IMG/VR virus record: IMGVR_UViG_3300017991_005548
Location: 232,328 to 296,327 of that record
Direction: 5' to 3' (one strand)
Length of the DNA stretch: 64,000 bases
Shown: in pieces, positions 26,321 to 55,833 of the stretch
Layout of the letters: each line of letters opens with the position of its first letter
How positions within the stretch are numbered: the first letter of the stretch is position 1
Notes under the pieces: model-generated
The model's database searches: none
Told to the model about the DNA's origin: nothing
Seen by the model: the letters and a program-made list of their open reading frames with translations, nothing else
Made by a program: the position numbers and the translations under genes

Positions 26321-29300
26321 CTATTGGCTTTCGCTAGAACTTTCGCTAAACATTTCAGATGAAGAGGAAGATGACTCACCTTGAGATGATGTTGATGAGC
26401 TTTCGGAGTATAACTCACTAGAGGTACTTGAGCTTTCGGAGTATAACTCACTAGAGGTACTTGAACTTTCAGAGAATCCTTCAGATGATGTACTTGAACT
26501 ATCGGTACTTTGTGAGTATTGTTCACTAGATGTACTTGAACTATCAGTACTCTCTGTTAATCTACGGAAAGTTCCATCCTCCCAAATTGCGTTTCCTAAA
26601 TCACCATCCCAGACAAAGTTATCTCCATTCTCTAGTATCCATTGTTCGTCATTAATGGATGAAGATGAACTTTCTGAACCAGAGCTTGTGGAGAATGGAC
26701 AACTTTCTTCAACAAATCCAGGGTCGCCAAATCCCCTGCCTTTTGTCCAGACATTACCTTGATTAATTGGATAAATTTGGTTTGGGTCACTATAGAACAT
26801 CCAAAGATTTATGTCATTAGTAACTGTATCGTTAACGGCCCAATAAAAATTACCACCTGATTCTCCATAAAATAGATATAAGTCATTTGTATAACGTTTA
26901 TATATTGGATACCCATTAAATGTTTGTATAGTTTTGTAATACGGCCCATTAACATCTTGAGCAGGGACAGAGCTTGAACTTGATTCTGAAGAAAATTGTT
27001 CACTTGATGTTGAGGAACTCTGAGAAATACTGCTAGATGATTCAGATTTTGATGAATCGCTTACTGAACTTTCAGAAAGTGAGCTTGAACTTTCAGATTG
27101 AGAGCTAGAAGACTCACTAGTAAATCCTCCAGAACTTGTACTACTAGAGTCTTTAGAACTTGAACTACTTTCTCCAACTCCATCAGCAAGGGTTGAAAGT
27201 CTAATGGCAGATAAACCAATTTGGCTTGCTACCGTTAAATCTGTTCCACCTGCCTGACCTTGGAGAGATGTCCTTAACTCAACTTCCTCCCCCGCTGTCA
27301 ATTCAAGGACAGTGTGGGCGTTAAAACCACCATTCCAAGTGTCTGCTCCCCCCTGAGAACCACGTTTGTAATTACCATGACCCCCAATATTACTTTCGAC
27401 ATCATCAACAAACCAATCCGCGCCAAATGTAAGTCTTGTCCCACTAGTTGAAACTGTATCATCTGACAATCCATTCCCCATAAACAAATAATCATCAGTA
27501 ATATTAACTTGAACTTCAGCATTAGAGTTTTGAGTATAGGAGTTTGTGTCAATTTGATCAACATCTCTAGCAATATTAAGAATGGTACTTGCTCCCACAT
27601 CCTGTCCACCAGTACTATCATGAGTAATAATGGTTTCTGTATGCCATGGTACTTCCATAATTTCCAGACTAGATGAGTTAACAACTCTGGCCATACCTGT
27701 TCCATCAATGTCTGCGTTACCTCTTTGGATTTGCAAGATAAGATCTTGATTTGCAGTTGTATTATCGACTAGAAAAAGCGCATGAGCCACACCTGGACCT
27801 GAACTATTACCTCTTTCATAGACATATGAATAACTACCCTCAATTGCTGTACCACCCAAAGTTGTCCTTAATATTCTTTGTGTTCTACTAGATCCAGGTC
27901 CAAACTTGAAAGAATATTTGACAAGATATTTTGCGACCTTTTTAAGTCGAACGGTTGTTGCATTTTGTTGTTCGATAACATCTGTGTCAGTTTCGTCTTT
28001 AGTATTAAATGTAATGTCCTGCCATACTGTTCCAACGTAAGCTGTAGTATCTATATCGTCAAAGTATTGTCCATATGCGACTTTGTCTTCACTTGGCAAT
28101 TTTACCAACATTAATGAAGTTTTAGAGTTCGATAACACATCAGATGCACTTATAAGTACGGGTTGCCATTCAACTCGGACATCTTGTCCTCTAACTACAT
28201 CTATAAAAACCGCTCCAGATGTAAAGCCTTCATCATTCTCATTATTTCTGGCATAGCCATATCCATAACCACCATCTTGAACTACACCATTAACCAAAAC
28301 TCTTGATTGAATTGAATGTCTGCCATCAGATGTTGATGTTGATCTAATCTCATACATGAGTAGGTATTTACCATTGCTATCTATAGTGATGTCTGTATTG
28401 TTTACGTTTTTGTTATAAATGCTGTCTTCTCTAACAGTGTTATTAAATTGAACTCCTTCCCATACCCCAATGTTTCCTATTGTTTGGGTATTATTTGTGT
28501 CTTGGTAAATTGCAATAAGTCCAGTATTTTCTACATCAGACTCACTACTGGAACTTGTGATTCCCTCACTACTGGAACTATTGGAACTGTCAGAACTAAA
28601 TTCATCGTTAAGCCATTTATCAGCGAGATATGCTTCTACTTCATATCTCTCTGATGTAGACAGAACCCTATCATAGAGAAGTATTTCAGCGACTAAACCT
28701 TCAGTATATGAATCATTATTTCTGTTTCTTCCAACAGCATAAAAATCAAACAACGGATTGAAAACGGAACCAAGAGTTTGATCTAAGGTTTTCAATCCAT
28801 TTATATAACCTTTTAAACTATTGGCACCATCAGCAGTAATTGATAAAACGGTTGGCAATCTATTCCCAGAAGATTGCTCAATGGAATATTCTGTAGCTCC
28901 TACTCTAATTCCTAAAGTATCTGATGCATTATAATTGACTTGAAAGGAAGTGTCTGGAGTTTCTGAAGAATCATTACAAAACCAACTATCAAATTCAGAT
29001 TGAGTTTCTGTTGATTTATAAACCAAGAAAAAAGTCATTGGGCCTTGCCAATTAACGATATCTCTGTCTAAATAATCGTTATCACCATCAAACTCAACAG
29101 TGTTCCTTCCATTCATTGAGTTCAAGTTGTAAACTGGTTGATTTGCAGGGGTTGTCTGCTCCACATTAAGTATATTACCAGATTTGTCAGCCCAAGCAGA
29201 TACATTACTTCCGTTCAAGGTAATAGTGGATGCATCATCTGCATCTAGCCATAACCTCAATCCATTGGACGGGAGTCCTTCTGATGATGTTGAGCTACTA

Positions 29301-29404
29301 TCTCTGCTTGAACTGGAGCTACTATCTCTACTGGAAGAGCTAGAACTACTGTCTCTGCTTGAGCTTGAGCTACTATCAAAACTACTTGAACTACTTGAAG
29401 CCAT
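26321..29404 (-). CDS. serine-rich fibre-like protein: Ser tract, LamG/ConA-like domain, three C1q/TNF-like domains, small G.Y...NG.P.Y module
   Basis: LRLWLDADDASTI...VSAWADKSG...FDGDNDYL; triple jelly-roll repeats; Ser tracts at both ends. Confidence 0.75.
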   Translation of the reverse strand: MASSSSSSFDSSSSSSRDSSSSSSSRDSSSSSSRDSSSTSSEGLPSNGLRLWLDADDASTITLNGSNVSAWADKSGNILNVEQTTPANQPVYNLNSMNGRNTVEFDGDNDYLDRDIVNWQGPMTFFLVYKSTETQSEFDSWFCNDSSETPDTSFQVNYNASDTLGIRVGATEYSIEQSSGNRLPTVLSITADGANSLKGYINGLKTLDQTLGSVFNPLFDFYAVGRNRNNDSYTEGLVAEILLYDRVLSTSERYEVEAYLADKWLNDEFSSDSSNSSSSEGITSSSSESDVENTGLIAIYQDTNNTQTIGNIGVWEGVQFNNTVREDSIYNKNVNNTDITIDSNGKYLLMYEIRSTSTSDGRHSIQSRVLVNGVVQDGGYGYGYARNNENDEGFTSGAVFIDVVRGQDVRVEWQPVLISASDVLSNSKTSLMLVKLPSEDKVAYGQYFDDIDTTAYVGTVWQDITFNTKDETDTDVIEQQNATTVRLKKVAKYLVKYSFKFGPGSSRTQRILRTTLGGTAIEGSYSYVYERGNSSGPGVAHALFLVDNTTANQDLILQIQRGNADIDGTGMARVVNSSSLEIMEVPWHTETIITHDSTGGQDVGASTILNIARDVDQIDTNSYTQNSNAEVQVNITDDYLFMGNGLSDDTVSTSGTRLTFGADWFVDDVESNIGGHGNYKRGSQGGADTWNGGFNAHTVLELTAGEEVELRTSLQGQAGGTDLTVASQIGLSAIRLSTLADGVGESSSSSKDSSSTSSGGFTSESSSSQSESSSSLSESSVSDSSKSESSSSISQSSSTSSEQFSSESSSSSVPAQDVNGPYYKTIQTFNGYPIYKRYTNDLYLFYGESGGNFYWAVNDTVTNDINLWMFYSDPNQIYPINQGNVWTKGRGFGDPGFVEESCPFSTSSGSESSSSSINDEQWILENGDNFVWDGDLGNAIWEDGTFRRLTESTDSSSTSSEQYSQSTDSSSTSSEGFSESSSTSSELYSESSSTSSELYSESSSTSSQGESSSSSSEMFSESSSESQ

Positions 29405-29463
29405 TAAATGTTTCCATTACTATTTTTCGTATTCTATATTATAAATTTTTTTCTATTAATCCC

Positions 29464-32400
29464 TTATCCAAAACCAAATAAACAGTATTGATCTGGGAAT
29501 GCCTCTGATGAACTTGAACTTTCGGAGAATCCTTCGCTTGAACTTGAACTTGAACTTTCGGAGAATCCTTCGCTTGAACTTGAACTTTCTGAAGAAGAGC
29601 TTTCTGAAGAAGAGCTTTCAGAGAAACCCTCTGATGAACTGCTACTTGAATCTTTAGAACTACTTGATGACGAAATATCAGCTTCAAAACAAGTTGCCAT
29701 TGCTGACAAACTGATATTAGTACCAGTAACAGTAGTTCCTGTTTCAGTGTACCACCTACCTTTAATGGTATAGGTTCCTGCTGGTAATTTATTTTCTGTT
29801 CTTACAAAAATTGAGCAACTTCCATCTTCATTAGCTGTTCCATGACTTCTTCTAATCTCACCATAATCAGTTCCATCAATGTTGATCGTGAAAAGAACAT
29901 CTCTATTTGCAACATCTGCTGATGTCTGTAATGTCATGCATGCAAAAATGTGGCCCTCTTGATTTAACTGTAGGGTTATGGAAGATCCATCTATATCCTC
30001 TATGGAAGTTGCAGTTGTTGTATCAGAATTAACTATTGTCTGGGATGATGGAAGAAACTCTTCTTGATTTGTTTCGCATCCGAAGGCCGTAAGCATAAAT
30101 GGAGCACCAGTGGCAGTAACTGGAGATTCAACACTCCACCTTCCTTTAACTGTTATGTCTCCAGGACCAAAGTTACTTCCAGTTCTTGAAGCTATACATA
30201 TAGAAGATCTGTCTCCTGCACTTGAATGGAACCTGGTAATAGGCAACTCTTGACCACCAATGTTCAGGGCGCAAGTAATGTCTTTGGCGGCTCCACCAGA
30301 AATGTATGTGGTTGCAGATAGGAAACCAAAAATTGGATGGTTCGTCTGCATGGTCAAGTCTTGAGTTAAGCCATCAATATCCTCTAGTGTTGCAGATGTT
30401 GTTGTGTCATTTGCAACTGTATCATATATTGATGGGATTTCATTTCCATAACAACTCTGCATAGGAATGGCGATAACAGTGATGCTAGTTGCAGATAGAG
30501 TTCCTCCTTCAGTATACCATCTACCTTTAACTGTGTATGTCCCTGCTGGAAGAGTGCTTGGAGTTCTATAAACAACACCAACACTACCATAATCATTTGA
30601 ACTTGACTGGTATCTAGTAATCACAGGAGAATCTGTTCCATTGATGCTAATGGCGAAATAACCTTCTTGGTTATTAGTTGTATTGTTGCTTGATAACGAC
30701 ATGAATCCCATTATGTGGGCATCGTCAACCAATATAACGTCAACGCTTGCTCCATCGATATCCTCAAGAGCGGTTGTATTGGTTGTGGAGTCAGATGCAA
30801 CAACTGCTCTTTCAACAAACATGCAATTAAGACATTCCAAGCTTGAAGAGCTACTTGATGAACTGCTAAATCCTTCACTACTTGAGCTTGAAGGAGAAGA
30901 TTCAGAAATACTTGACGATGACTCAGACAGAGATGAAGACGATTCGGACTGAGAACTCTCTGAGAAAGAACTCTCAGATTGACTACTGCTGGATTCTGAT
31001 GTACTACTTGAGCTAGATGATTCTGAGCTTATACTTTCAGTAAACTCATCGCAGTGTCTGTACCTAAAATGAACGTTCTCTGTAGAACTACTTGATGAGT
31101 TACTACTTGATGATTCACTCTGCGAACTTGAACTTTCTGAGAATCCTTCGGATGAACTGCTTGAAGGAGAGGATTCCGACTGACTAGATGATGATTCTGA
31201 TTGAGAACTACTAGACTCACTTTGTGATGACGAACTCTCTGACTGAGAAGATTCACTTTGAGAACTAGAACTCTCTGACTGCGAAGAACTGGATTCAGAT
31301 TGAGATGAATCGGACTGACTACTTGAGCTTTCAGACTGACTACTTGAGCTTTCAGATTGAGATGAATCGGACTGACTAGATGAACTTTCAGATTGACTAC
31401 TTTCACTTTGTGAACTGCTTGACTCTGATTGACTACTTTCAGACTGAGATGATTCACTTTGAGATGATTCCGATTGACTACTTATACTTTCGGTAAATAA
31501 ATCGCATAACAAATATTTGTAATGAACGTTTTCTGTTGAACTACTTGATGATTCACTACTTGAGCTTTCACTTTGAGAACTTGAGCTTTCAGAGAACCCT
31601 TCAGATGAACTACTTGAGCTTTCAGAGAACCCTTCAGATGAGCTACTTGAGCTTTCAGAGAACCCTTCAGATGAGCTACTTGACTCAGATTGTGACGACT
31701 CTGATTGCGAAGAAGAACTTTCAGACTGGGAGCTACTAGACTCAGATTTACTACTTTCACTTTGACTGCTACTGGACTCTGACTGACTGCTACTGGACTC
31801 ACTTTGTGACGACTCTGATTGCGAAGAAGAACTTTCAGACTGGGAGCTACTGGACTCACTCTGAGATGATTCACTTTGAGAACTACTCGATTCCGATTTA
31901 GAACTACTGGACACAGACGATTCACTCTGACTGCTACTACTTTCTGACTGAGAACTTGAGCTTTCAGATTTTGAACTACTGGATTCTGATTGTGAACTAC
32001 TGGATTCACTTTGAGATGATTCACTCTTAGAACTGCTGGACTCTGATACAGAACTTTCGGAAATCGAACTACTAGATTCAGACTGAGAGCTTTCACTCTG
32101 AGATGATGAACTTTCACTTTCTGATGAGGAGCTTTCTGATTGAGAGCTACTGGACTCAGATTGCGAACTTTCTGATTGAGAGCTACTGGACTCACTTTGA
32201 GATGACTCACTTTTACTACTGCTTGATTCGGATTGAGAAGATTCACTCTTTGAGCTACTGGATTCTGACACAGAACTTTCAGAAATCGAACTGCTAGATT
32301 CTGACTGAGAACTCTCACTCTGCGATGAAGAACTTTCTGACTGACTACTTGAACTCTCACTCTGCGATGAAGACGATTCAGATTGAGAACTCTCACTTTG

Positions 32401-35400
32401 AGATGATGAAGATTCACTTTGAGATGAGGATGATTCAGATTTAGAACTGCTGGACTCAGACTGAGAAGATTCACTTTTACTGCTACTAGATTCAGATTGT
32501 GAACTTTCGCTCTGAGATGATGAACTTTCACTTTCTGAGGAAGAACTCTCTGATTGAGAACTACTAGATACAGAGGATTCACTCTGACTACTTGAACTTT
32601 CTGATTGAGATGATTCTGATTGAGAACTACTGGACTCACTTTGAGATGACGAACTCTCACTTTGACTACTGCTGGATTCAGATTGAGAACTTTCAGATTG
32701 AGAGGAAGATGATTCGCTCTTTGAAGATGAACTCTCGGACTCAGAAGAACTTGATTCACTTTGTGATGATTCAGATTCTGAACTACTCGATTCAGATTGA
32801 GAACTCTCAGACTGAGATGATGAAGATTCACTTTGTGATGAAGATGATTCAGACTGAGAACTACTGGATTCAGATTGTGAAGAGCTGGATTCAGACTGAG
32901 AGCTACTGGATTCAGATTGTGAGCTTTCACTCTGACTAGATGAACTTTCTGATTTAGATGAACTACTTTCTGACTGAGATGATTCAGATTGACTGCTTGA
33001 ACTTTCACTTTCTGACGAAGAACTTTCAGATCTTGAACTGCTGGACTCACTTTGAGATGACTCACTTTGAGATGAACTCGACTCACTTTGAGATGATGAG
33101 CTTTCACTCTGACTGCTACTTGATTCAGATTGAGATGAACTTGATTCAGATTGAGAACTTTCACTCTGAGATGAACTACTTTCGGACTGACTACTGCTGG
33201 ATTCAGACACAGAACTTTCTGACTGAGATGATTCAGATTGACTACTGGAGCTTTCACTCTCTGACGATGAACTCTCAGACTGTGAACTGCTGGACTCTGA
33301 TTTTGAACTGCTGGACTCTGATTGCGAGCTTTCGCTCTGGGAGCTAGAGCTTTCGCTTTGACTACTGCTGGACTCAGATTTTGACGATGAGCTTTCAGAT
33401 TGAGATGATTCAGATTGTGATGAACTTGACTCTGATTCTGAACTACTTGATTCACTTTGAGATGATTCACTCTTACTACTACTGGATTCAGATTGAGAGC
33501 TACTGGACTCACTTTGAGATGATTCAGATTGAGAGCTACTGGACTCAGACTGAGAAGATGAACTTTCGGATTGACTGCTTTCACTTTGTGAACTGCTTGA
33601 CTCTGATTGACTACTTGAACTCTCAGACTGTGAACTACTCGACTCTGATTCAGATGAACTAGACTCACTTTGAGAACTAGATGATTCGGATTTAGAGCTA
33701 GAGCTTTCAGACTGAGAACTTTCGCTCTGACTACTACTTGATTCACTTTGAGATGACTCTGACTGACTACTGCTGGATTCACTTTCTGATGAAGAACTTT
33801 CGCTCTGACTACTACTAGATTCAGACTGAGATGACTCACTTTGAGAGGAAGAACTCTCTGACTGAGACGATTCAGATTGAGAACTTGAGCTTTCAGATTG
33901 AGATGAATCACTCTGACTAGATGATGATTCAGACTGTGAAGAACTGGACTCAGATTGACTGCTACTGGACTCACTTTCAGACGAAGAACTTTCAGATTGG
34001 GATGAACTGGATTCTGATTGAGAGCTTTCACTTTGACTACTGCTGGATTCAGACACAGAACTTTCTGACTGCGAAGATTCGGACTGACTGCTGGAACTTT
34101 CACTTTCTGAAGATGAACTCTTAGATTGTGAACTACTTGATTCAGATTGAGATGAACTTGACTCTGATTCTGAACTACTTGATTCAGATTGTGAACTACT
34201 TGATTCAGATTGTGAACTACTTGATTCAGATTGAGAACTACTGGACTCAGATTGTGAACTACTTGATTCAGACTGTGAACTGCTTGACTCAGATTGACTA
34301 CTACTGGACTCTGACTGAGAACTACTCGATTCAGATTGACTACTGCTTGATTCGGATTGAGAGCTTTCAGATTGAGAAGAGCTAGACTCAGATATAGACG
34401 ATTCACTTTGCGAACTGCTGGACTCTGACTGAGATGAACTAGATTCAGAAACAGAAGATTCAGACTGACTACTTGAACTCTCTGATTGAGATGAAGAGCT
34501 TTCAGAAACAGAAGATTCGCTCTGTGACGAGGATGATTCTGATTCAGATTGTGATGATTCTGATTGAGAACTACTAGACTCACTTTGTGATGACGAACTC
34601 TCTGACTGAGAAGATTCACTTTGAGAACTAGAACTCTCTGACTGCGAAGAACTACTCTCAGATACAGATGACTCAGATTGAGAACTGCTGGACTCTGACT
34701 GTGATGAACTTGATTCGCTCTCTGAGCTTGAGCTTTCACTCTGACTGCTACTAGATTCAGATTTGGAAGAAGAGGATTCACTCTGACTGCTACTAGATTC
34801 AGATTGGGAGCTTGAAGACTCAGACTCACTACTTGAAGATTCACTTTGAGACGATTCTGATTGAGAAGAGCTAGACTCAGATTGACTGCTACTCGATTCA
34901 GACTCAGATGAAGATGATTCTGATTGACTACTCTCTGATTTACTACTACTGGATTCACTTTCGGATTGCGAACTCTCACTTTGACTACTGCTGGATTCAG
35001 ACTGAGAACTTTCAGATACAGAAGACTCACTTTGTGATGAACTAGATTCACTTTGACTACTGCTGGATTCACTTTCTGATGAAGAACTTTCAGACTGAGA
35101 AGAGCTACTTTCAGATTGAGACGAAGAACTCTCTGATTGACTACTACTAGATTCAGACTTAGAACTTGAACTTTCACTAAATAATCCAGAAGATGAACTA
35201 GAGGAACTAACTGGACACTCTCCATTCTGAACATTAGGAGCGGGAGATGTTCCAGACCCAACAAACCAGGTTTCTGTTGATGGAGAAACCCATGGCTCTG
35301 TTATACCAGTGTTATATGCGGAAACGCCCTCTAATGTAGTTGATAAGGTCCATCTACTGATATTAGAGAAGAAAAGAAATCTTGATCCATCACTGTAATA

Positions 35401-42294: not shown

Positions 42295-42366
42295 AAAAGT
42301 ATTTTCTTGTTATGTTTGTCAGTACAATGTTATTCAAATAAAGTGTCGTCAAACCCTATGGTAAAA

Positions 42367-43663: not shown

Positions 43664-43666
43664 TAT

Positions 43667-44029: not shown

Positions 44030-44139
44030 AACAATCTCTCCAAAAAAAACTTGATTCTAGAATTTATTCTAGCTCCAGGTTCGATTCTCCTATAGAACAG
44101 GTTTTTTTAAGCAAAAAAATGAATCATTAGAACAAAAGG

Positions 44140-45544: not shown

Positions 45545-45545
45545 T

Positions 45546-48500: not shown

Positions 48501-49997
48501 GTCGGTGGCGATGTCGCTATTGCTTATTATGGCAGATCTATTGGTAGTCAGTATTTCACATATTATGTTGTTTCTTCAGATATTAATGGTGGCACAGGGT
48601 CTTGGTCCTCACCATCAACGATTCAGCAATCTCCTGTAAATGCTACATCTGTAACCACTCAAGAAATAAGTCTAGTGGATTATGATGGGGTCGCAACAGT
48701 AGCATATTATGAAGCTTCATATGGTGAAATGAAAGTAGGATTTGATATTAATGAAAGAGGATATTCATCTTCAAGCTCAAGTCAACAGTACTCAGAATCA
48801 TCTTCATCTATTAGCTCACAAGGGTATTCTGAAAGCTCTTCGAGTTCTAGTGGAGCAATACCAATGTTTCAAACAACATCTGCGTCTCCAGATGTGTTTG
48901 CACCTTTTGTCTTTATATCTGGAGAGACGGTAACTTGGATATTAGGAGACGGCAATCAAGTTACTAGCAATGGTCCACTATCTCATGTATATACAGACGG
49001 AGAACCAAGCCATAACGTTGAAATACAAGCATCAAATCCTTCAAATCTTACTTCAATCAACGTTGATAGTGAAGATATTACATCTATTGACCTAAGTTAT
49101 TTCCCTGGACTTGAAAATCTTAACTGTGCCAACAACACTATTTCATCTCTGGATATATCCACTAACTCATCATTAGACTTCTTGAATTGTAACAACAACA
49201 ATATATCTTCACTTGATCTTTCCAACAACACTCTATTAGAAATAGTACGTTGCAATAATAACAATTTGACTTCACTTGATCTTTCGAACAATAGCAATGT
49301 TACCATTTTTGATTGTTCGAACAATAACATCTCAAGCTTAACGAATTTATCTGGATCAATTGATGAAATTGATGTTAGTGACAATAACTTATCGTCACTA
49401 GACACTTCCAGTATAACATCAGCAACTACCATAACATGTAGTGGTAATGTTATATCATCATTAGACGTTTCAGTTGTTACAGGTTTGGAGACTCTATATT
49501 GTGGAGGAAATAGCTTCTCATCAATTGATATCTCTTCTAATTCATCACTAATAACTTTTTCATGTGATTCCACCTCAAGTTTAACTTCTGTAAATCTGGG
49601 ATCAAGCTCAGTTGAGACAATTGCCCTTAACAACAATAACAATTTGACTTCTGTGGACATTTCGTCAAGCTCTTCAGTAACGAGCATAGCTTGCGCGAAT
49701 AGTGGACTCACTTCTGCAAATGTTGCGTCATCAACCGTAACCGCGATAACATTTGTAAACAATTCACTTACATCACTAGATGTGTCATCATGTACAGCAC
49801 TTGACGAACTTTTTGTTACATCTAACAATCTCTCATCTTCAGCAGTTAATACTATATTGATTGATCTGGACAATAATGGGCTGTCAAATGGAAATGTTCA
49901 ACTTAATGGACAATCCCCATCTGCTCCACCAACTGGAGGGGGAATAACAGCAAAAGCGAATTTACAGGCAAAAGGATGGACAGTAGTCACAGATTAA
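45546..49997 (+). CDS. 1483-aa multidomain surface/fibre protein: propeller, Ser tracts, LamG-like, NGxPAIAY propeller, leucine-rich repeats
   Basis: FIADTDNNQV; SYWKMEE...FSSWVK; repeated NG.PAI.[YF]/YVRAT.S.G.SW; L.C.NN.ISSLD[IL]S repeats. Confidence 0.8.
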   Translation: METWITESITINGDLSYALRRGEINTNYVDIEVVAYSDRWNNFDALIEFREREGGEWRSDMQISFSTANSIDKNRLRNLACASNGGLNLIRWKYPQNGLKYGQKPDIRLKILPRYLNFSTSSISFMMSENSGINFSKFIDASTWVQPINLNQSGQTIALTSDSVRIYNDLSSSYIYEYSGLSNPSFSIQINDGSYFIADTDNNQVLEVSEDFTSVINTIAVTSPVFLDYIEDNDTLLVTSSGGTIYEYVRGSFILVWTSTTSFGELSTATYSKKDFNRIVTCDSQNNQVRIIDRITNLTTTHFGFSNFVGETDSFIKPHIAVEFEDGSLTVVERIGRVATFEQFTSSSSSSLDSSSESSMTSSSLSSSSSSEGYSTSSSSSSEGVTSQSNSSSSQSNSSSSQSESSISLSESSLQYSSSSSTSSEGYSSSSSTSSEGYSESSSTSSEGYSESSSSSSTSSLGYSSSSSYNIDPFNLASFTSYWKMEEAEEGTRFDYQGNNDLSEGDRFIPRVAGKNKEAAGQFLDGLERDAVTDLIPTDSMIFSSWVKVDYADLVTGSGSQIMTWDSTSYQLSVASNSLYARVRYTSGIKEVSGPITEGVHHIFLVATKTSLKLFLDGGLLDSETFSTQNFDYFAGYKLVIGGSDGSLRAGVDGFVDEVGFWMDEDVDSFPGYAEDFAAKMWNGGNGLFPASVSSDSSDSTESFDNVSSSSDSDIYNDWNRDLIDRRKNSGFTSSMAMVNGQPAVAYYAFGIIFYSRYNGSEWEAPVLVDNTNIRTDTAISMAVVDGNPAITYSKTTNPTFTYVRATNSDGSSWGTPINVTPSGTFADDRSLAIINGNPAIAFWNFDTGGGLKYVRATDSTGSSWGSVEDVDLTSNNYGTGCSLLQVDGQPAISYTHQGAGNNAVLYYNRYNGASWVRTAIIGGSGQGIGFTTTLKFVNGNPAIAYRDDSGIKFIRSNNSTGSSWPGSEVTVASLSTAMNSSMEIVGGDVAIAYYGRSIGSQYFTYYVVSSDINGGTGSWSSPSTIQQSPVNATSVTTQEISLVDYDGVATVAYYEASYGEMKVGFDINERGYSSSSSSQQYSESSSSISSQGYSESSSSSSGAIPMFQTTSASPDVFAPFVFISGETVTWILGDGNQVTSNGPLSHVYTDGEPSHNVEIQASNPSNLTSINVDSEDITSIDLSYFPGLENLNCANNTISSLDISTNSSLDFLNCNNNNISSLDLSNNTLLEIVRCNNNNLTSLDLSNNSNVTIFDCSNNNISSLTNLSGSIDEIDVSDNNLSSLDTSSITSATTITCSGNVISSLDVSVVTGLETLYCGGNSFSSIDISSNSSLITFSCDSTSSLTSVNLGSSSVETIALNNNNNLTSVDISSSSSVTSIACANSGLTSANVASSTVTAITFVNNSLTSLDVSSCTALDELFVTSNNLSSSAVNTILIDLDNNGLSNGNVQLNGQSPSAPPTGGGITAKANLQAKGWTVVTD

Positions 49998-50007
49998 GGG
50001 TTAAATT

Positions 50008-53000
50008 ATGTCAGTACAAAACGGAATAGGATATTTAAGGGCAACATACAACCCTGACTTACACTTCACGGAAAATAGTGATGCGTATGCAAATCTTATG
50101 TATCCATACATCCAAAGTGATGGTGGGAACACTAAGAATGTATCCCTGTCCGTTGATGTCATCAACTCTGACAAAAATTTTGCGACAAAAAATAATTACA
50201 AAGAACAAGAATGGTCTATCAATGAAACAAATGGCGGAAATTTACTGTTAGACCAAGTTATTTGGGGATTTAAAGAAGCAACACATAACACAAGAGATTC
50301 TAAAGCACTAAATAATGCATTTTGTTTTAATGACCAAACCGTTACAATAAAGATAACCAAGCAAGGACACTTACAAGGATATATCGACAACGACTATCTA
50401 TATGCAAAAAATGAGATAGAACTATCTGTAGTAGATGTCGTAAGGGGCAAGGAAACTACTTTAGCTACCTATAAGGATCTAGAATCAGGTATAGATGAAG
50501 AAAATAGATCCTTACAATGGTCTATTCCTTCAAAAAGCAAAGGTTTCTACCTAAACTATGGATTTTTTGGATTATTTGTTTTTAGAATTAAGGTCACAAG
50601 CGGATATTATATCGATGCCAGAAGGAACGTTAAATCAAGTTATCAGGATCGTATAACAAATGCATATCTACAACTATTGACTTTTTCTGCCGATCAAGAA
50701 GCTGTTAATGTACAGTCTGATTCCATTAATATCTTCGAAGGGAATCCCCAACCAAATGATTCTTTAACAGATCTGTTTGACAAAAGCATTTTTGCTTCCT
50801 TGGAACAATACAACCAGAATCCGTTAAGTGGTAGTCAGAAAAAAGCGATTATCGCTGATCAAATAGCTGTGCTATTTATGTCACAACATCCTGTTGTATC
50901 ATCAGACATAACTCCTTCAAAGATACAGGGATTTGGTGGAGAAAAGGCCATTCAACCACAAAAGATAATAGAGAAAGCAATAACATATGCTGAAAGGTAC
51001 GATCCTGATGTCATTCAATTGGCACAGAATAGATTGTTTGGTATGTTAGCTAATTATAAGACTTTCAGTTTTGCTGATGAAATAAACAACCTATTCTCAT
51101 CTACTAATCAATCAGCACAGAATCTTGTTGAACCGACAAGAATCATTTATATGGATGAGTATGGTGACCTATCAGATGACATGGGTGTTGATGGAATATT
51201 GTTCACTCCATATGTTGTTGAGAATGTTCATACAGAAATTTTAAGTAATGTACCCCCAGCAGAAGCATATGAGATCCCACTCTATAAATATAGTGTAGGT
51301 ATTGATACCCTTGTTGTTACTGATCTATCCGATGAGAATCTTGGATGCGGAGATACTGACATTAAACTGGCATTCAATGTTATCTTCGGAGACAATAAAA
51401 TAGACAAGATTTATTATCAGGTATGGCTGAGAAACAATAAGTCCTATTTAGAATATGTAGACAAAAGTGGAACCTCAACTGATCATTCGTTTGATTTTAG
51501 TGCTCCAGGTGGAATTTCCTGTACATACAGTGGAGGCAGTTTAACCCTGGGAGACATTGTAACAGCAAGAGTAACTATAATTGATATCTATGGTTTTTCC
51601 AATGTTTTTGAAAGGAAGTTGTTTATACCTCTTAATAATGACAGACCAGCCATTACAGAAATCACTTCATTCCAAAGACAAGATGGAAGTGGATTGATTG
51701 ACGTTTTCTATCATTACCAAGGAACATCTGAAGTTAATGCCGCAAATGTCTCTTTGACTTATTCAACAAACAATTCGTCATTCTCAAGTGTTTCCACAAA
51801 TGTAATTGGGGATATCGGTTTGGGCATTATGCCAGGCCATAGAAAGATAACTTGGAACCCAACATCAGTATTATCATCAAGTAATGATGTCGTTTTTGTA
51901 AAAATAACTTTAACTGATGTTGATGAATATTCTAATGCAGGAATAACTGAATCCAGTGTTGTCGTTGTTGATTTGACAACTCCAGAAGTTTCAATTAGAA
52001 AATTGTCGTTAGAAGAAGATGAGGACATGGAAGAAAGCAGTTCGTTGTCTGATTCAAGTGAGACTTCATTAAGTTCAGAAAGCTCAGAGTCATCTATGGG
52101 TTATAGTACAAGCTCTTCCCAATCTGATGGCCCAAGTTCTGAATCAAGTTCATCAAGTGAAGGCTACTCTGAAAGTTCCTCTACTAGTTCAGAAGGTTAT
52201 TCAGAAAGTTCTTCTACTAGTTCAGAAGGTTATTCAGAAAGTTCGTCTTCACAATCTGATAGTTCTAGTAGTTCAGAAGGCTATTCAGAAAGCTCCTCAA
52301 CTAGTTCAGAAGGCTATTCAGAAAGTTCGAGTTCACAAAGTGAAAGTTCTTCGTCAGAGATGTATTCCGAAAGCTCATCAACTTCAAGTTTTATGTATTC
52401 TGAATCAAGTAGCTCAACTAGTGGAGATTTCGAAATTGTGGACGGGGACTCCAATTATATTTCCATGTCTGTAATAAATGGTCGTCCAGCAATCGCATAT
52501 GTCCCAGTTAGTTCTAGTAATGTGTCCTATATAAGATCTGATGATGTAAATGGAGAGTCCTGGTCAGACTCTCCTTTGGGGGTTGGAAGTGGGGATAGAT
52601 ATCCATCACTATTGACAGTATCTTCTCGTCCATGCATCGCCGCAGTTGTTGGGCCATCTTCTAATCAAGCAAGGTTTTCAAGAGCCAGTAATGTAGATGG
52701 TAGTAACTGGGGTACTCCAATTGTTAATGTCTTAATTGGAAGTAATGCAACCCAATTTACTGATCTAAAAATAATCAGTGGTAATCCAGCCGTTGTATAT
52801 GATAGCTCATTTCTAACGTATGTTCGGGCAACCAACTCTACTGGTACGTCTTGGGGCACTCCAGTAACAATAAGCTCAAACACTACAAGAGGGAGTTTAA
52901 ATACAGTTAGTTCAAGGCCAGCCATTTCTTTTGTTAATTACTCAACCCAAGACCTAATGTATTTAAGGGCGGATGACTCAACAGGATCGGCATGGACGGC

Positions 53001-53439
53001 AACTCCAATAGCCGTTGATGCAATAGGGACAGGATCTGCTTTGTCTGTATTAGAAATAATAAATGGTCGTCCAGCAATTGCATATTCACTCTCTGACGGA
53101 TCGCTGATGTATATAAGAGCGGATGACTCAACAGGATCGGCATGGACAGCAACCCCAATAACTGTTGACTCAGGAGCTTCTATAACTTGGAAATCAATGA
53201 TTGTTGTTAACGGTAATCCTGCTATAGCTTATGTAAGTGGATCATCAGAGTTAATGTATATAAGAGCAGATGACTCAACAGGATCGGCATGGACGGCAAC
53301 TCCAATAACTGTTGATGGAAACAATGCAGGGCAGTATAACTCTATGCAAGTTGTTAATGGGAACCCTGCTATAGCATATAAAGGAAATAGCCAACTTAAA
53401 TATATTAGAGCTAAGGACGCTAATGGAGATTCTTGGTAA
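50008..53439 (+). CDS. 1143-aa protein with Ser tract and C-terminal NGxPAIAY propeller
   Basis: SEGYSES repeats; seven NG/SG.PA[IV] blades. Confidence 0.78.
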   Translation: MSVQNGIGYLRATYNPDLHFTENSDAYANLMYPYIQSDGGNTKNVSLSVDVINSDKNFATKNNYKEQEWSINETNGGNLLLDQVIWGFKEATHNTRDSKALNNAFCFNDQTVTIKITKQGHLQGYIDNDYLYAKNEIELSVVDVVRGKETTLATYKDLESGIDEENRSLQWSIPSKSKGFYLNYGFFGLFVFRIKVTSGYYIDARRNVKSSYQDRITNAYLQLLTFSADQEAVNVQSDSINIFEGNPQPNDSLTDLFDKSIFASLEQYNQNPLSGSQKKAIIADQIAVLFMSQHPVVSSDITPSKIQGFGGEKAIQPQKIIEKAITYAERYDPDVIQLAQNRLFGMLANYKTFSFADEINNLFSSTNQSAQNLVEPTRIIYMDEYGDLSDDMGVDGILFTPYVVENVHTEILSNVPPAEAYEIPLYKYSVGIDTLVVTDLSDENLGCGDTDIKLAFNVIFGDNKIDKIYYQVWLRNNKSYLEYVDKSGTSTDHSFDFSAPGGISCTYSGGSLTLGDIVTARVTIIDIYGFSNVFERKLFIPLNNDRPAITEITSFQRQDGSGLIDVFYHYQGTSEVNAANVSLTYSTNNSSFSSVSTNVIGDIGLGIMPGHRKITWNPTSVLSSSNDVVFVKITLTDVDEYSNAGITESSVVVVDLTTPEVSIRKLSLEEDEDMEESSSLSDSSETSLSSESSESSMGYSTSSSQSDGPSSESSSSSEGYSESSSTSSEGYSESSSTSSEGYSESSSSQSDSSSSSEGYSESSSTSSEGYSESSSSQSESSSSEMYSESSSTSSFMYSESSSSTSGDFEIVDGDSNYISMSVINGRPAIAYVPVSSSNVSYIRSDDVNGESWSDSPLGVGSGDRYPSLLTVSSRPCIAAVVGPSSNQARFSRASNVDGSNWGTPIVNVLIGSNATQFTDLKIISGNPAVVYDSSFLTYVRATNSTGTSWGTPVTISSNTTRGSLNTVSSRPAISFVNYSTQDLMYLRADDSTGSAWTATPIAVDAIGTGSALSVLEIINGRPAIAYSLSDGSLMYIRADDSTGSAWTATPITVDSGASITWKSMIVVNGNPAIAYVSGSSELMYIRADDSTGSAWTATPITVDGNNAGQYNSMQVVNGNPAIAYKGNSQLKYIRAKDANGDSW
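52972..53310 (+). repeat. three in-frame near-identical propeller-blade repeats
   Basis: GATGACTCAACAGGATCGGCATGGAC at 52972, 53122 and 53269 (RADDSTGSAWTATPI). Confidence 0.9.
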
Positions 53440-55833
53440 ATGATCCTAGAGCAAACAAAAATATTAACTAATCGATACCCTCCAGAATATTTTTCTATGG
53501 ATTTAGATAACCGTGGATATCCACATCTTGTTTGGGTAGAGCAAAAGAATGGTCATTTCGATCTCATCTATAAATTCTGGAATGGACTCGACTGGGAATC
53601 TCTAGAAACAGAAGTTATCTATAGATCCGACGAAGACATCTCATATGTGAATTTGGTAATTGCAAGTGGGAAAGTCCTAATCATATTTTTGAAAAAATCT
53701 GATGAAAACTCGGTAATAGGATTTGTAAAAATCGATCAAGTTGTCGAAGAAATTATTGAATACGAAACGGGAGGCTTTGTAAACTGGGTTAGCCTTATAA
53801 CAGATACTACTGAAAAGAAAAGACCTTATGTAATTACTCATGAAGTATATGAATTCAAAGTTTATCAATTAACTGATGAAAATCTGATATTGAAGAGTTT
53901 ACAATCAAAGGTTCTTGACGATTTTGATAACATCAAGGTTTCAAATACAGTTGACAATTTTATTATTGCAATTAATGGTGAAGAAAGTATAGAGTTTAAT
54001 TTCTATGATTACACTTCCAATACTTGGGCCAATTCAAGTTTTATTGAACTTTCTAGTTCAGCAGTTGGTAATGTCGTTGATTTTGATGTTAAGGGGTTGG
54101 CATCATCTAGTAAGGCAGGATTCACGTTTTTAAGAAACGATACCGCAGATCAAATTTATTATGTTGTCTCTGATAGCTCAGGAACTGAAACCACTCTTGG
54201 GACAAACCCAATACACCAAGTCTCAACCAGTCTTACCGCGCCTAATGGTTTCTCAATAGGTGGATTCGTAAATGTAAGTTTATCATATGAAAGCGACTTT
54301 AAACCTAACATATTCGTCCTTGGAACTCAGAACATAAAACTTTCTTATAACGGTGAATGGAATTCTGATATCATAGGAGTCCCAACAAAATCAGAATCAA
54401 CAGTATTTATATTCAACTCATTTAATATTGTGACCGTCTCTAGTGGACAAATATACTTTTTCAATTTGGTTGATGACGCTATCGTTGGAGAGGAAGTCTT
54501 AATTTCTTTACTAAATGCAAAAGAGTTTATTGTCTCAGATTGGAAAAAAGGAGCACTCGTTCCTCAAGAGTTAAGTTTTGTCGATAATTATGACAATGAA
54601 GTTGGGGACATATTGAGGGATGCATTGTCTCCAATACTTGTGACAGCTTCAAATGAACATCCAGGTTATGCATCATCATCATCAACCTCATCAGAAAGTT
54701 CGCCAAGCTCTAGTTCGACATCGTCAACTTCTGATAGCTCACCAAGTTCAACATCATATAGCTCCATAAGTTCATTATCTATTAGTTCACAATCCGTTTC
54801 CGATAGCTCTTCATCTCAATCATTGTCCTCAAGTTCCTCAAGCTCATCAAGTGGAGGTTACTCCGAATCGTCATCATCTAGTGTTGGTTATTCTGAATCA
54901 TCATCATCTAGCATAGGGTTCTCTGAATCATCTAGTTCAATTTCCGAATCTTCAAGTGAAGGGTTCTCTGAATCATCCCCATCAAGCCAAGGAAATTCAG
55001 AATCATCTAGTTCATATTCTGAGTCCTCAAGTGGAGGTTATTCAGAATCGTCATCAACTGGAAATGTTCGTTTTGAATATTTGTTGTGTGACTTATTTAC
55101 GGAAAGTATAAGCTCAGAGTCGTCTAGCTCTGATCCGATGTCAAGTAGCTCTCAATCAATGAGTAGCAAATCTGAATCCAGCAGTTCTCAGAGTGAAAGT
55201 TCTCAATCTGAAAGCTCTCAATCTGAAAGCTCTAGTTCAGAAGCAATACTAGACAGTTCATCATCCTCTTCTTCTTCGTCTGATGGAGGAGTGCCAGCCG
55301 CAATCGAATGTACATTTAATCATGGATGGCCTGGATGTACTCTTACTGACCCAAAAGTTAACATAACACTTACTGGAATTAACTCTGGAAACTCTGATGG
55401 AGGAAGTGGGACTCCACTAGATCCATATTACAAAACATTCTTTGGATGTAATTTTACCAATGGTCAACCCCAAGAAATATGTGGAACATTTGGAAGCAAC
55501 GCAAGTTTAGAATACTGGAGCGTTACTGGTAGTCAAGAAAGATTAAGGTTGGAAGCTTGGGCCGTAAGTAGTCGTCATAGAGTAAATGTATATACCACAT
55601 CTATATGGAATCCGAATGGAATTTTTGAAAAATTCATAAATGGTGGAAATACATTCACTATAAATAACTGGAATGGGGACACCACACCTCCTAATGATGC
55701 TTATGTAACACCTACCAACTGGTCCATTGGTGGAGTTAAAATCTTAGATGAGCAATTTGGCTATGTTGTGAATACTGATGGAATAACCATTAGATGGGAC
55801 CGTGGAGCGAATGGATCTGGTCAAAGTTGGTAA
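53440..55833 (+). CDS. 797-aa protein: N-terminal propeller-like region, Ser tract, Cys-containing C-terminal domain
   Basis: D..GYPHLVW...LIYKFWNG..W blade; [GV]GYSES repeats. Confidence 0.75.
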   Translation: MILEQTKILTNRYPPEYFSMDLDNRGYPHLVWVEQKNGHFDLIYKFWNGLDWESLETEVIYRSDEDISYVNLVIASGKVLIIFLKKSDENSVIGFVKIDQVVEEIIEYETGGFVNWVSLITDTTEKKRPYVITHEVYEFKVYQLTDENLILKSLQSKVLDDFDNIKVSNTVDNFIIAINGEESIEFNFYDYTSNTWANSSFIELSSSAVGNVVDFDVKGLASSSKAGFTFLRNDTADQIYYVVSDSSGTETTLGTNPIHQVSTSLTAPNGFSIGGFVNVSLSYESDFKPNIFVLGTQNIKLSYNGEWNSDIIGVPTKSESTVFIFNSFNIVTVSSGQIYFFNLVDDAIVGEEVLISLLNAKEFIVSDWKKGALVPQELSFVDNYDNEVGDILRDALSPILVTASNEHPGYASSSSTSSESSPSSSSTSSTSDSSPSSTSYSSISSLSISSQSVSDSSSSQSLSSSSSSSSSGGYSESSSSSVGYSESSSSSIGFSESSSSISESSSEGFSESSPSSQGNSESSSSYSESSSGGYSESSSTGNVRFEYLLCDLFTESISSESSSSDPMSSSSQSMSSKSESSSSQSESSQSESSQSESSSSEAILDSSSSSSSSSDGGVPAAIECTFNHGWPGCTLTDPKVNITLTGINSGNSDGGSGTPLDPYYKTFFGCNFTNGQPQEICGTFGSNASLEYWSVTGSQERLRLEAWAVSSRHRVNVYTTSIWNPNGIFEKFINGGNTFTINNWNGDTTPPNDAYVTPTNWSIGGVKILDEQFGYVVNTDGITIRWDRGANGSGQSW

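What the first reader, a model, noticed from the sequence alone, without database searches (positions are those of the whole stretch)
26321..55200. Aromatic G[FY]SES punctuation shared by Ser tracts of five different genes
Seen: SEG[FY]SESSS and variants (GGYSES, VGYSES, ELYSES, EQFSS, GLFSES) recur about every 9-11 residues in the tracts of the 1027, 4276, 1483, 1143 and 797-aa proteins, mostly next to globular domains. The long central 4276-aa array has almost no aromatics. Inference: a recognition or priming site for a modifying enzyme or assembly partner, or sticker motifs like [GS]Y[GS] LARKS and FG repeats that let different fibres co-assemble.
Basis: partly seen in the sequence, partly recalled or inferred. 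Interest (0 to 1): 0.6.

Follow-up and report, generated by a model that had tools for sequence, protein, structure and literature searches.

The report
Aromatic-punctuated serine tethers of a megaphage
A bacteriophage with a genome of over 500 kb joins or ends the domains of about 40 adhesin-like proteins with acidic serine-rich tethers, and the tether segments next to folded domains carry a Tyr/Phe about every 11 residues; this pattern is kept at the protein level in many genes and in related phages, so it is a real, selected and apparently undescribed linker design whose function is untested.

Summary
The window is the right end of a 296-kb virus record, which is itself a piece of a phage of at least 508 kb. 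In that record, 35 of 261 ORFs carry Ser tracts (66% S, 13% E, 8% Q) holding 149 aromatic residues in the context S-S-E-G-[YF]-S-E-S-S. G[FY]SES occurs 36 times against 0.16 in shuffles. The commonest spacing is 11 residues. Density is 3-4 per 100 aa within 50 aa of tract edges and 0.3 per 100 in the deep interior. The motif is not recent DNA copying between genes: synonymous sites are near random between genes, and only neighbouring units within a gene are fresh 33-nt duplicates. Orthologues at 33-73% identity keep an aromatic in 29 of 31 tracts, each having homogenised its own variant (EGY, LGF, ENY, ENF, EKF). The motif is therefore selected at the peptide level and confined to this phage lineage. 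Function was not testable. My best reading is sparse stickers or handles at the ends of disordered tethers that are probably O-glycosylated; the phage carries a 25-kb glycan island. Rival readings are a glycosyltransferase recognition site, subtilase cleavage sites, or a neutral repeat legacy.

The parts
26321..29404 (-). p1027: N-terminal Ser tail, LamG-like domain, BclA_C/C1q-like region, small domain, and a C-terminal Ser tail with 5 aromatic units
   Evidence: ORF; phrog_10356 virion structural protein and PF18573; tracts
26327..26551 (-). p1027 C-terminal tail tract (res 952-1026) with 5 aromatic units (EQY, EGF, ELY x2, EMF). It is followed only by the last residue, so it is a tail rather than a linker
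   Evidence: a 33-nt tandem at 26396-26474 with 95% identity
26969..27169 (-). p1027 tract res 746-812, with aromatics near both edges (GGF, EQF)
29464..42294 (-). p4276: NHL propeller, two Cys-bracketed modules, giant Ser/Glu/Gln arrays, two small domains, three beta-sandwich repeats, and a Ser tail; 3157 of its 4276 residues are tract
40951..41268 (-). p4276 first tract (res 343-448) directly after the NHL domain: 7 aromatic units, mostly EGY/LGY/ERY/EKY at 9-11 aa spacing
31537..35208 (-). p4276 largest array (res 2363-3586, 1224 aa): aromatics only at tract positions 10, 1183, 1194 and 1205. The interior is built of aromatic-free units of 7, 12 and 19 residues
35494..38412 (-). p4276 array res 1295-2267: aromatics at both edges plus one internal cluster (tract positions 504-547)
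38686..40374 (-). p4276 array res 641-1203: 4 aromatics in the first 100 aa, 2 mid-array, and 1 at 20 aa from the end
29506..29673 (-). p4276 C-terminal tract (res 4208-4263) with three EGF units, followed by the terminal peptide EAFPDQY... that is shared with a 2527-aa paralogue
   Evidence: a 36-nt tandem at 29509-29587 with 100% identity
31489..31536 (-). embedded 16-aa island TENVHYKYLLCDLFTE inside the p4276 tract (second copy at 31036-31083)
45546..49997 (+). p1483: N-terminal domain, tract, LamG (PF13385), repeat propeller-like region, tract, LRR domain
46581..46949 (+). p1483 main tract (res 346-468): 6 aromatic units, EGY x4 at 11-aa spacing. The first 26 residues can be aligned with the orthologues
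   Evidence: a 33-nt tandem at 46790-46895 with 94% identity
48765..48851 (+). p1483 short linker (res 1074-1102) with QQY and QGY units
50008..53439 (+). p1143: conserved 676-aa N-terminal region ending in tandem FN3-like sandwiches, tract, then a repeat propeller-like C-domain that is swapped for other domains in orthologues
52036..52422 (+). p1143 tract (res 677-805): 9 aromatics, EGY x5
   Evidence: 33-nt and 84-nt tandems at 52159-52383
53440..55833 (+). p797: orphan N-domain, tract with 7 aromatics, embedded island, aromatic-free tract, orphan C-domain
54673..55056 (+). p797 tract res 412-539 with GGY, VGY, IGF, EGF, SSY, GGY units
55057..55104 (+). p797 copy of the embedded island (TGNVRFEYLLCDLFTE)
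42367..43203 (-). p278, a sixth protein in the block with a C-terminal Ser tail (res 241-278, one Phe)
44564..45544 (+). subtilase S8 gene, ending 1 nt before p1483. An S8 gene also lies near the p1143 orthologue of a relative
55882..56721 (+). nucleotide-sugar (UDP-glucose) dehydrogenase-like ORF directly after p797. It covers only positions 69-297 of the 413-position family model

Best explanation
The five genes share a linker design, not copied DNA, and this phage lineage uses that design everywhere. Modular proteins carry binding or enzyme domains (NHL, LamG, LRR, C1q-like, FN3-like, beta-helix, protease). These domains are joined, and often ended, by acidic disordered Ser tracts built from short units of the form S(3-5)-x(1-3)-S-E.

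There are two classes of unit. Aromatic-free units (x = Q, K, E, V) build the long spacer arrays. An 11-residue aromatic unit, consensus S-E-S-S-S-[ST]-S-S-E-G-[YF], forms the 20-60-residue junction segments next to folded domains, the short linkers, and the free terminal tails.

Shown: the aromatic residue is maintained at the peptide level, while codons, the residue before it (G, Q, N, K, L), the Y/F choice and the copy number all turn over through local 33-nt duplication and homogenisation.

Inferred mechanism: the tracts are extended tethers, probably O-glycosylated, that hold adhesin or enzyme heads away from the virion. The evenly spaced aromatics would act as sparse stickers or handles, giving weak multivalent contacts (chain to chain, chain to glycan, or chain to adjacent domain). 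These contacts would sit at the tether ends and on the tails, while the aromatic-free interior stays a non-adhesive spacer.
For: Scale: 35 of 261 ORFs carry tracts, 7072 tract residues in all, and 19 paralogues share one 51-aa N-terminal plug followed by a tract.
Motif statistics and edge bias.
Peptide-level maintenance: between genes the same-codon fraction is 0.351 against 0.296 expected. The TCN/AGY family mismatch is 0.41 against 0.47 expected. Identical 13-mers share 66% of nucleotides against a 59% random-codon expectation, whereas adjacent units share 89%. After collapsing near-identical DNA, 115 distinct sites keep the same context. blastn between the tracts of different genes gives only short matches, mostly in aromatic-free parts.
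Orthologues: 29 of 31 tracts keep aromatics, each with its own homogenised variant, and a hydrophobic residue sits at a fixed position after the domain border in the p1143 orthologues. Neighbouring genes of a marine relative at 39% identity show the same pattern.
Residue selectivity: in the orthologue tracts Y and F are the third and fifth commonest residues, while C, P, H, R and W are near zero.
Free tails carry 3-5 units each.
The tract is predicted disordered, with pLDDT under 50.
Glycan capacity: three GT2, four or five GT1/GT4, a GT32-like enzyme, a sulfotransferase, PseI/NeuB-like and PseF-like enzymes, and methyltransferases lie at record 28-53 kb, beside the fibre paralogue cluster.
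Against: No experiment or computation here touches function. The tracts are strongly acidic (13% E), which disfavours self-association unless divalent cations bridge the chains. Only 65 of 149 sites fit [GS][YF][GS]. The trimer prediction gave no answer. The short 15-38-aa linkers of the 19 paralogues also carry one hydrophobic punctuation each, which fits an enzyme handle at least as well as a sticker. The edge bias rests largely on four giant arrays in two proteins. That these are virion proteins is inferred from PHROG and Pfam domain matches only. The glycan island could instead serve DNA modification or host-surface modification.
Confidence: 0.4

Rival explanations
1. Recognition or docking handle for a modifying enzyme. 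A phage glycosyltransferase (or another transferase) binds the [EL]-G-[YF] element and modifies the serines within about 5 residues on either side. A spacing of 10-11 residues would then cover a whole junction segment.
For: The phage has a 25-kb glycan island with at least 8 glycosyltransferases, nonulosonic-acid synthase-like and cytidylyltransferase-like genes, a sulfotransferase, and a weak MptE/Maf-like match (E 1.2e-5, below the curated cut-off). A sugar dehydrogenase fragment lies in the fibre operon. Even the shortest linkers keep one hydrophobic punctuation. Virion O-glycosylation by phage-encoded enzymes is known in mycobacteriophages (as cited in PMC12619734).
Against: More than 1100-residue stretches of tract have no aromatic, so most serines would lack a handle. 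No known bacterial O-glycosylation sequon matches this motif (my own knowledge, not tested). No co-variation between the motif and any enzyme was shown. No Pkinase-family kinase was found.
Confidence: 0.25
2. Neutral legacy. An old 11-residue repeat unit that happened to contain Tyr/Phe is spread by slippage and concerted evolution. Array edges keep old units while the centres are replaced by a newer aromatic-free unit.
For: Aromatic units are visibly duplicated in tandem at 91-100% identity, and each orthologue has homogenised its own variant. Old units at the edges of an array are a general property of tandem arrays (established knowledge).
Against: Independent homogenisation in a dozen or more orthologues always retained an aromatic, while the flanking residues changed. 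The central arrays are not young: their units are only 65-90% identical. C, P, H and W are almost absent from the tracts, although some of them are as close by mutation to Ser codons as Y and F are. The first hydrophobic position is fixed across orthologues at 56-73% identity.
Confidence: 0.15
3. Processing sites. Large hydrophobic P1 residues (F, Y, L, M) in an otherwise protease-resistant tract let the phage subtilase, or another protease, cut near domain borders to trim or release heads.
For: The S8 subtilase gene ends 1 nt before p1483, and an S8 gene lies about 2.3 kb from the p1143 orthologue in a relative. The punctuating residues are F, Y, L and M, and they concentrate at the borders. 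Trypsin-like, ClpP and protease-domain tract proteins are also encoded.
Against: Arrays of up to 15 units and terminal tails are hard to explain as cleavage sites. The subtilase specificity is assumed from the family in general. No processed forms are known.
Confidence: 0.1
4. Ordered element. The aromatic units are not disordered but pack on the neighbouring folded domain, or hold three parallel chains of a trimeric fibre in register.
For: The units lie close to tract edges. The first hydrophobic position after the p1143 border is fixed. C1q-like domains, as in p1027, are trimeric (established knowledge).
Against: pLDDT is under 50 and there was no trimer signal, although the tool states this is not evidence either way. 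One hydrophobic residue in 11 cannot form a core. The unit number varies from 1 to 15 between orthologues.
Confidence: 0.08
5. Recent DNA copying or gene conversion between the five genes produced the shared motif.
For: Short identical words of 22-32 nt are shared between the tracts of different genes. One DNA cluster links a p1027 unit with p4276 units.
Against: Synonymous sites between genes are close to random. 115 of 137 sites are distinct at the DNA level. The motif is present in orthologues from other samples.
Confidence: 0.03

Closest known systems
Polyserine linkers of modular carbohydrate-active enzymes in marine Cellvibrionaceae (Saccharophagus degradans, Teredinibacter turnerae)
   Same: Ser-dominated flexible tracts join binding and catalytic modules in many proteins of one genome, and domains are shuffled across the linker. 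The papers are PMC2386152 and PMC2699552, found; I did not read them in detail.
   Different: As I recall, those linkers are near-pure Ser without regular aromatic punctuation. These tracts are 13% Glu and 8% Gln, reach 1224 residues, occur in a phage, and also form free N- and C-terminal tails.
Serine-rich repeat glycoproteins (SRRPs) of Gram-positive bacteria
   Same: Very long Ser-rich repeat stalks carry a binding region. In SRRPs these stalks are O-glycosylated by dedicated transferases (PMC6973325 and PMC7948813, abstracts).
   Different: There is no aSec-type signal peptide, no LPXTG anchor and no SRR1-BR-SRR2 layout. The repeat units differ, since SRRPs use dipeptide-type S-A/V/T/E repeats (my knowledge). 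The host is a virus.
Sandcastle-worm cement protein Pc-3
   Same: It has a Ser overabundance and is extremely acidic once phosphorylated (PMC4275877). As I recall from the original description, its Ser runs are punctuated by single Tyr residues, which is the closest match in pattern.
   Different: It is an animal secreted adhesive. Phosphorylation is unproven here and no Pkinase-family enzyme was found. The E-G context and the 11-residue unit are specific to the phage.
[G/S]Y[G/S] low-complexity domains (FUS type) and FG-nucleoporin repeats
   Same: Evenly spaced single aromatic residues sit in a polar Ser-rich spacer, 10-20 residues apart (my knowledge of those systems).
   Different: The tracts are highly charged rather than near neutral. 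The dipeptide is G-F, not F-G. Only 44% of sites fit [GS][YF][GS]. Self-association is untested.
Glycosylated virion surfaces: mycobacteriophage capsid and tail-tube C-termini, and giant-virus fibrils
   Same: A virus-encoded glycosylation capacity occurs together with Ser-rich terminal tails on presumed virion proteins (the mycobacteriophage case is as cited in PMC12619734; the giant-virus fibrils are from my knowledge).
   Different: Nothing here shows that the tracts are glycosylated. The scale (about 40 proteins, and tracts of up to 1224 residues) and the aromatic punctuation have no counterpart that I could find.

Membership tests
Polyserine linker (PSL) class | Ser-dominated low-complexity tract between independently folding modules | tested here: met
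   Tracts are 66% Ser and lie between Pfam/PHROG domains. The C-domain after the tract is swapped in orthologues.
Polyserine linker (PSL) class | Near-pure Ser without a regular internal motif | tested here: not met
   13% E and 8% Q, with a regular E-G-[YF] unit and embedded 16-aa islands.
Gram-positive SRRP adhesins | N-terminal aSec signal peptide, C-terminal LPXTG anchor, SRR1-BR-SRR2 layout | tested here: not met
   By inspection of the translations, p4276 starts directly with an NHL domain and ends in ...CLFGFG. There is no LPXTG in any of the five proteins.
Gram-positive SRRP adhesins | Linked dedicated glycosyltransferases and O-glycosylated repeats | tested here: inconclusive
   GT1/GT4 and GT2 genes exist in the record, but they are not GtfA/B-specific and are not adjacent to the five genes. 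Glycosylation itself cannot be tested here.
[G/S]Y[G/S] prion-like / LARKS domains | Repeated [GS]Y[GS] triplets | tested here: inconclusive
   65 of 149 aromatic sites fit [GS][FY][GS]. The rest have Q, N, K, L, E or M before the aromatic residue.
[G/S]Y[G/S] prion-like / LARKS domains | Low net charge, Q/N/G-rich composition | tested here: not met
   E 12.8%, D 1.5%, K 1.1%, R 0.2%.
[G/S]Y[G/S] prion-like / LARKS domains | Reversible self-association through kinked beta segments | not testable with these tools
   The three-copy prediction gave 'no answer', which the tool says is evidence neither for nor against.
FG-nucleoporin repeats | F-G dipeptide core (FG, GLFG, FxFG) | tested here: not met
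   The order is G-F-S, and the position after the aromatic is S in 124 of 149 sites and G in 5.
Poly-phosphoserine adhesive / biomineral proteins (Pc-3 type) | Ser runs punctuated by Tyr | tested here: met
   Runs of 3-5 or more Ser with single Y/F. In orthologues the runs are purer.
Poly-phosphoserine adhesive / biomineral proteins (Pc-3 type) | Extensive Ser phosphorylation | not testable with these tools
   There is no PF00069 match in the record. Other kinase families were not searched.
Phage virion appendage (fibre or decoration) proteins | Homology to known virion proteins or presence in virions | tested here: inconclusive
   The LamG parts match phrog_10356 'virion structural protein'. 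The p768 neighbour has a weak beta-helix match (below the curated cut-off) and a PHROG 'tail protein' match. The p1143 N-region shows only generic FN3-like folds, with low-TM matches to N4 tail proteins.

The most novel reading that the evidence does not exclude
A bacteriophage of more than 500 kb clothes itself in a self-made mucin-like coat. About 40 adhesin- or enzyme-tipped polyserine fibrils would be glycosylated (nonulosonic acid, uronic acid, sulfate, methyl) by the phage's own 25-kb glycan island. The fibrils would be cross-linked or bundled through evenly spaced aromatic stickers and through single-Cys islands embedded in the tracts. This would be a prokaryotic-virus counterpart of giant-virus fibrils, built on a sticker-and-spacer grammar.
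Probability: 0.2. Interest if true: 0.85.

Novelty: new variant of a known kind. Interest (0 to 1): 0.6.

Why it matters
Low-complexity linkers are usually treated as featureless. Here a linker has a grammar with three elements: spacer units, aromatic junction units, and embedded Cys islands. Selection keeps this grammar across dozens of genes and across diverged phages while the DNA underneath churns.

If the aromatic units are stickers or enzyme handles, they would show how a very large phage builds long, hydrated, possibly glycosylated appendages that can reach hundreds of nanometres. They would also offer a simple natural test bed, with one residue type at a fixed spacing, for sticker-and-spacer ideas outside eukaryotic condensates.

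There is a practical point for annotation as well. The Ser tract is the joint at which C-terminal heads are swapped, so it marks the module boundaries of host-range or adhesion proteins in this lineage.

Tried and rejected
- Trimer prediction of p1143 residues 690-805 (3 copies): verdict 'no answer', score 0.01, pLDDT under 50. I do not use it as evidence either way.
- p797 N-domain in viral contigs: no relatives. Pfam found nothing for either p797 domain.
- An exact two-unit degenerate DNA pattern (EGYSE, six codons, EGYSE): 0 hits in viral contigs and in genome contigs.
- A looser three-unit EGY pattern gave 83 viral loci. Only two are Ser-rich, and both lie on the contig of the relative with 75% TerL identity.
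- p1143 N-domain in five TerL-related fragments: no match, because those fragments do not cover the fibre region. They do hold a few Ser tracts.
- Atlas look-alike search of the tract: no usable hit.
- AlphaFold model of the p1143 N-region: mean pLDDT 62. Only residues 430-655 are confident, and they give generic FN3-type matches.
- Paper searches for polyserine or serine-rich tracts in phages, tail fibres and huge phages: nothing relevant.
- Public runs: the phage is present in three studies (X2 and X3 show identical contig sizes and depths and may be one data set), all as DNA and kept as contigs.
- Homologues of the p1027 central region in other organisms have no Ser tracts at all, so the tract does not travel with the domain.
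- The search for homologous proteins sees only candidates of 0.55-1.75 times the length of the whole query protein, so shorter or longer relatives of the domains may have been missed.
- No alternative genetic code was used.

Full report
WHERE THE WINDOW LIES. The window is positions 232,328-296,327 of a 296,327-bp IMG/VR record labelled provirus. It carries a large terminase at window 7770-9635 and a ribonucleotide reductase. A second record of the same phage (476,248 bp, 100% identical terminase) has 212 kb to the left of this record's start and breaks off inside the p4276 repeat. Identical proteins are on record on contigs of 524 kb. The left 200 kb is transcribed almost entirely from one strand, carries tRNAs and a tmRNA, and has essentially no Ser tracts. 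The element is therefore a phage of at least about 508 kb, and the 'provirus' trimming is probably a mis-call. It encodes about 59 tRNAs, including five tRNA-Ser that cover all six Ser codons.

THE OBSERVATION. The five ORFs are as described. I defined tracts as stretches of at least 15 aa in which 15-aa windows are at least 50% Ser. By this rule, 35 of 261 non-nested ORFs of the record hold 7072 tract residues, composed of S 66.5%, E 12.8% and Q 7.6%. The tracts hold 149 aromatic residues with a sharp context. Position -2 is E in 85, -1 is G in 52 (then S, Q, N, L), +1 is S in 124, +2 is E in 74, and Ser lies beyond on both sides. G[FY]SES occurs 36 times against 0.16 in shuffles. The commonest spacing is 11 residues. 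Aromatic density is 3-4 per 100 aa within about 50 aa of either tract edge and 0.32 per 100 more than 80 aa from an edge. Tracts under 160 aa all have 3-4 per 100, while the four tracts over 400 aa have 0.6. The aromatic-punctuated state is thus the norm, and the giant arrays of p4276 and of one 2527-aa paralogue are the exception.

IS IT DNA COPYING? Within a gene, neighbouring aromatic units are fresh tandem copies, with 33- or 36-nt periods at 91-100% identity in p1027, p4276, p1483 and p1143. Between genes they are not copies.
- The same-codon fraction at shared residues is 0.351 between genes, against 0.296 for random codon draws and 0.532 for adjacent units.
- Ser codons fall in different families (TCN against AGY) in 41% of between-gene comparisons, against 47% expected and 26% for adjacent units.
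- Identical 13-residue motifs in different genes share 66% of nucleotides, against a random-codon expectation of 59%; adjacent units share 89%.
- After merging sites that differ at 6 or fewer of 39 nt, 115 of 137 remain distinct and keep the same context.
- blastn between the tract DNAs of different genes finds only short matches, the longest being in aromatic-free parts or between obvious paralogues.
Ser codon usage in tracts matches that of the other genes, so the tracts are not simple trinucleotide expansions. The central p4276 arrays have periods of 21, 36 and 57 nt at only 65-90% identity, so they are not young.

ORTHOLOGUES. The p1143 N-region has 19 relatives at 33-73% identity in other samples. 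Every one continues into a Ser tract right after the same conserved border, and the tracts carry aromatic punctuation. The first hydrophobic residue sits at a fixed place in the orthologues at 56-73% identity. p1483 has two orthologues at 66-69% identity with the same pattern. Pooled, the orthologue tracts have Y at 3.7% and F at 2.8% (third and fifth commonest residues), no Cys, the same context and a spacing peak at 9-11. 29 of 31 tracts hold at least one aromatic. Each protein has homogenised its own variant: EGY, LGF, ENY, ENF/EKF, EGF/EQF or SSF. Repeated independent homogenisation that always keeps the aromatic, while everything around it changes, is my main argument for selection on that residue.

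Other genes next to a marine relative's orthologue (39% identity) also have tracts with LGY, KGY and FGY. After the tract the C-terminal head differs between orthologues: a propeller-like repeat, FG-GAP, metallophosphatase plus a jelly-roll-like module, or a small domain. Many orthologues simply end in the tract. In contrast, homologues of the p1027 central region in other organisms have no Ser tracts. A three-unit EGY scan of 2.9 million viral contigs found Ser-rich hits only on the contig of the relative with 75% TerL identity. The design therefore belongs to this phage lineage and not to the domains.

WHAT THE PROTEINS ARE. The folded parts are binding or enzyme modules.
- NHL propeller: p4276 res 1-342.
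- LamG: p1027, p1483 and many paralogues; these match a PHROG annotated as virion structural protein.
- C1q-like BclA_C: p1027.
- LRR: p1483.
- FN3-like sandwiches: p1143.
- Protease domain: a 1075-aa paralogue.
Nineteen paralogues share a 51-aa N-terminal domain with four Cys, followed directly by a 15-38-aa tract and then varied heads. This looks like one docking plug used for many heads. Several proteins begin or end with a tract, so the tracts are tails as well as linkers. That these are virion appendages is an inference from the domain matches.

OTHER GRAMMAR IN THE TRACTS. A 16-aa island, T-E-N-[VI]-x-[FYH]-x-Y-x-x-C-[DE]-L-F-T-E with one Cys, is embedded in the tracts of four proteins in at least 13 copies. 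p4276 and the 2527-aa paralogue end with the same short peptide, EAFP[DE]QY. The short linkers use S-E-S-[FI]-[GN]-N-x punctuation.

MODIFICATION CAPACITY. Beside the paralogue cluster, at record 28-53 kb, lies a glycan island. It holds three GT2, four or five GT1/GT4, a GT32-like enzyme, a sulfotransferase, a PseI/NeuB-like synthase, a PseF-like cytidylyltransferase, several methyltransferases and a weak MptE/Maf-like match. A partial nucleotide-sugar dehydrogenase follows p797, and an S8 subtilase precedes p1483. An S8 gene is also near the orthologue in a relative. No Pkinase match was found. Nothing ties these enzymes to the tracts except co-residence in one genome.

MECHANISM. Three things are shown. 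The repeat grammar has two unit classes. The aromatic residue is under peptide-level selection. The DNA underneath turns over quickly. Two things are inferred: that the tracts are disordered and probably glycosylated tethers, and that the aromatics at the tether ends and tails act as sparse stickers or handles. The rivals, with my estimates, are an enzyme recognition handle (0.25), neutral legacy (0.15), subtilase sites (0.10), an ordered packing element (0.08) and inter-gene DNA copying (0.03). The trimer prediction gave no answer.

KNOWN RELATIVES OF THE IDEA. Polyserine linkers of marine CAZyme-rich bacteria, Gram-positive SRRPs, the Pc-3 cement protein, FUS-type and FG repeats, and glycosylated virion surfaces each share some features. 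None shares all of them, and the defining features of SRRPs, FG repeats and prion-like domains were tested here and not met (see the membership table). Seven of the ten allowed paper searches were run; the five aimed at serine tracts in phages found no description of them. I rate the finding as a new variant of a known kind.

READS. The same genotype occurs in sediment and seawater metagenomes of three studies (X2 and X3 may be one data set filed twice), as DNA contigs that break within the tracts. No RNA holder was listed. The exact lengths of the giant arrays therefore rest on the assemblies.

Noticed in passing
window 31489-31536, 31036-31083 (-), 55057-55104 (+); also record ORFs at 160646-163003 and the 2527-aa protein at G001 208568-216151: A conserved 16-aa island with a single Cys (TEN[VI]x[FYH]xYxxC[DE]LFTE) is embedded in the Ser tracts of four different proteins, in at least 13 copies. 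It could be a docking peptide or a disulfide cross-link point.
   Followed up: partly
window 29464-29520 (-) and the C-terminus of G001 208568-216151: p4276 and a 2527-aa paralogue end with the same short peptide, EAFP[DE]QY, after a Ser tail.
   Followed up: no
record G000 11.8-25.5 kb, 78.4-88.3 kb, 158.5 kb; G001 202-205 kb: Nineteen paralogues share a 51-aa N-terminal domain with four Cys, followed at once by a short Ser tract and then by different heads (LamG, beta-helix-like, Cys-bracketed module). This looks like one plug used for many heads.
   Followed up: partly
whole record; G001 1-212 kb: The 296-kb 'provirus' record is an inner piece of a phage of at least 508 kb. The trimmed-off left part looks like phage too (one strand, tRNAs, tmRNA with tag AKKVIEFPTASAVAA).
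   Followed up: partly
record G000 197395-197469 (-): A tRNA with anticodon CTA (which reads TAG) sits among about 59 phage tRNAs. The ORFs of the window are intact under the standard code, so I assumed no recoding.
   Followed up: no
record G000 28-53 kb (L016, L017): A 25-kb glycan island holds at least 8 glycosyltransferases, a sulfotransferase, PseI/NeuB-like and PseF-like genes, methyltransferases and a weak Maf-like match.
   Followed up: partly
window 55882-56721 (+): The nucleotide-sugar dehydrogenase ORF covers only positions 69-297 of a 413-position family model, so it may be a fragment or a split gene.
   Followed up: no
window 50008-53439 and orthologues P0002-P0020: The head after the Ser tract is swapped between orthologues (propeller-like repeats, FG-GAP, metallophosphatase, small domain) or is absent, so the tract is a domain-shuffling joint.
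   Followed up: partly
window 10409-11776 (-): A weak Tubulin_3 match (E 0.0037, below the curated cut-off) in a 455-aa ORF next to the terminase, possibly a phage tubulin.
   Followed up: no
window 11845-15348 (-): A ribonucleotide reductase of 1167 aa matches its family in two stretches with an inserted segment around residues 343-413, possibly an intein or another insertion.
   Followed up: no
window 52971-53269: One contig of run X2 skips 297 nt inside the repeated blades of the p1143 C-domain. This is either a variant with a different blade number or a collapsed assembly.
   Followed up: no
loci L057, L061, L076, L088, L095 (unrelated viral contigs): Long arrays of a five-residue repeat, G-S-E-G-Y-[KRW], in other IMG/VR contigs. 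These are a different Tyr-containing repeat class, unrelated to the Ser tracts.
   Followed up: no
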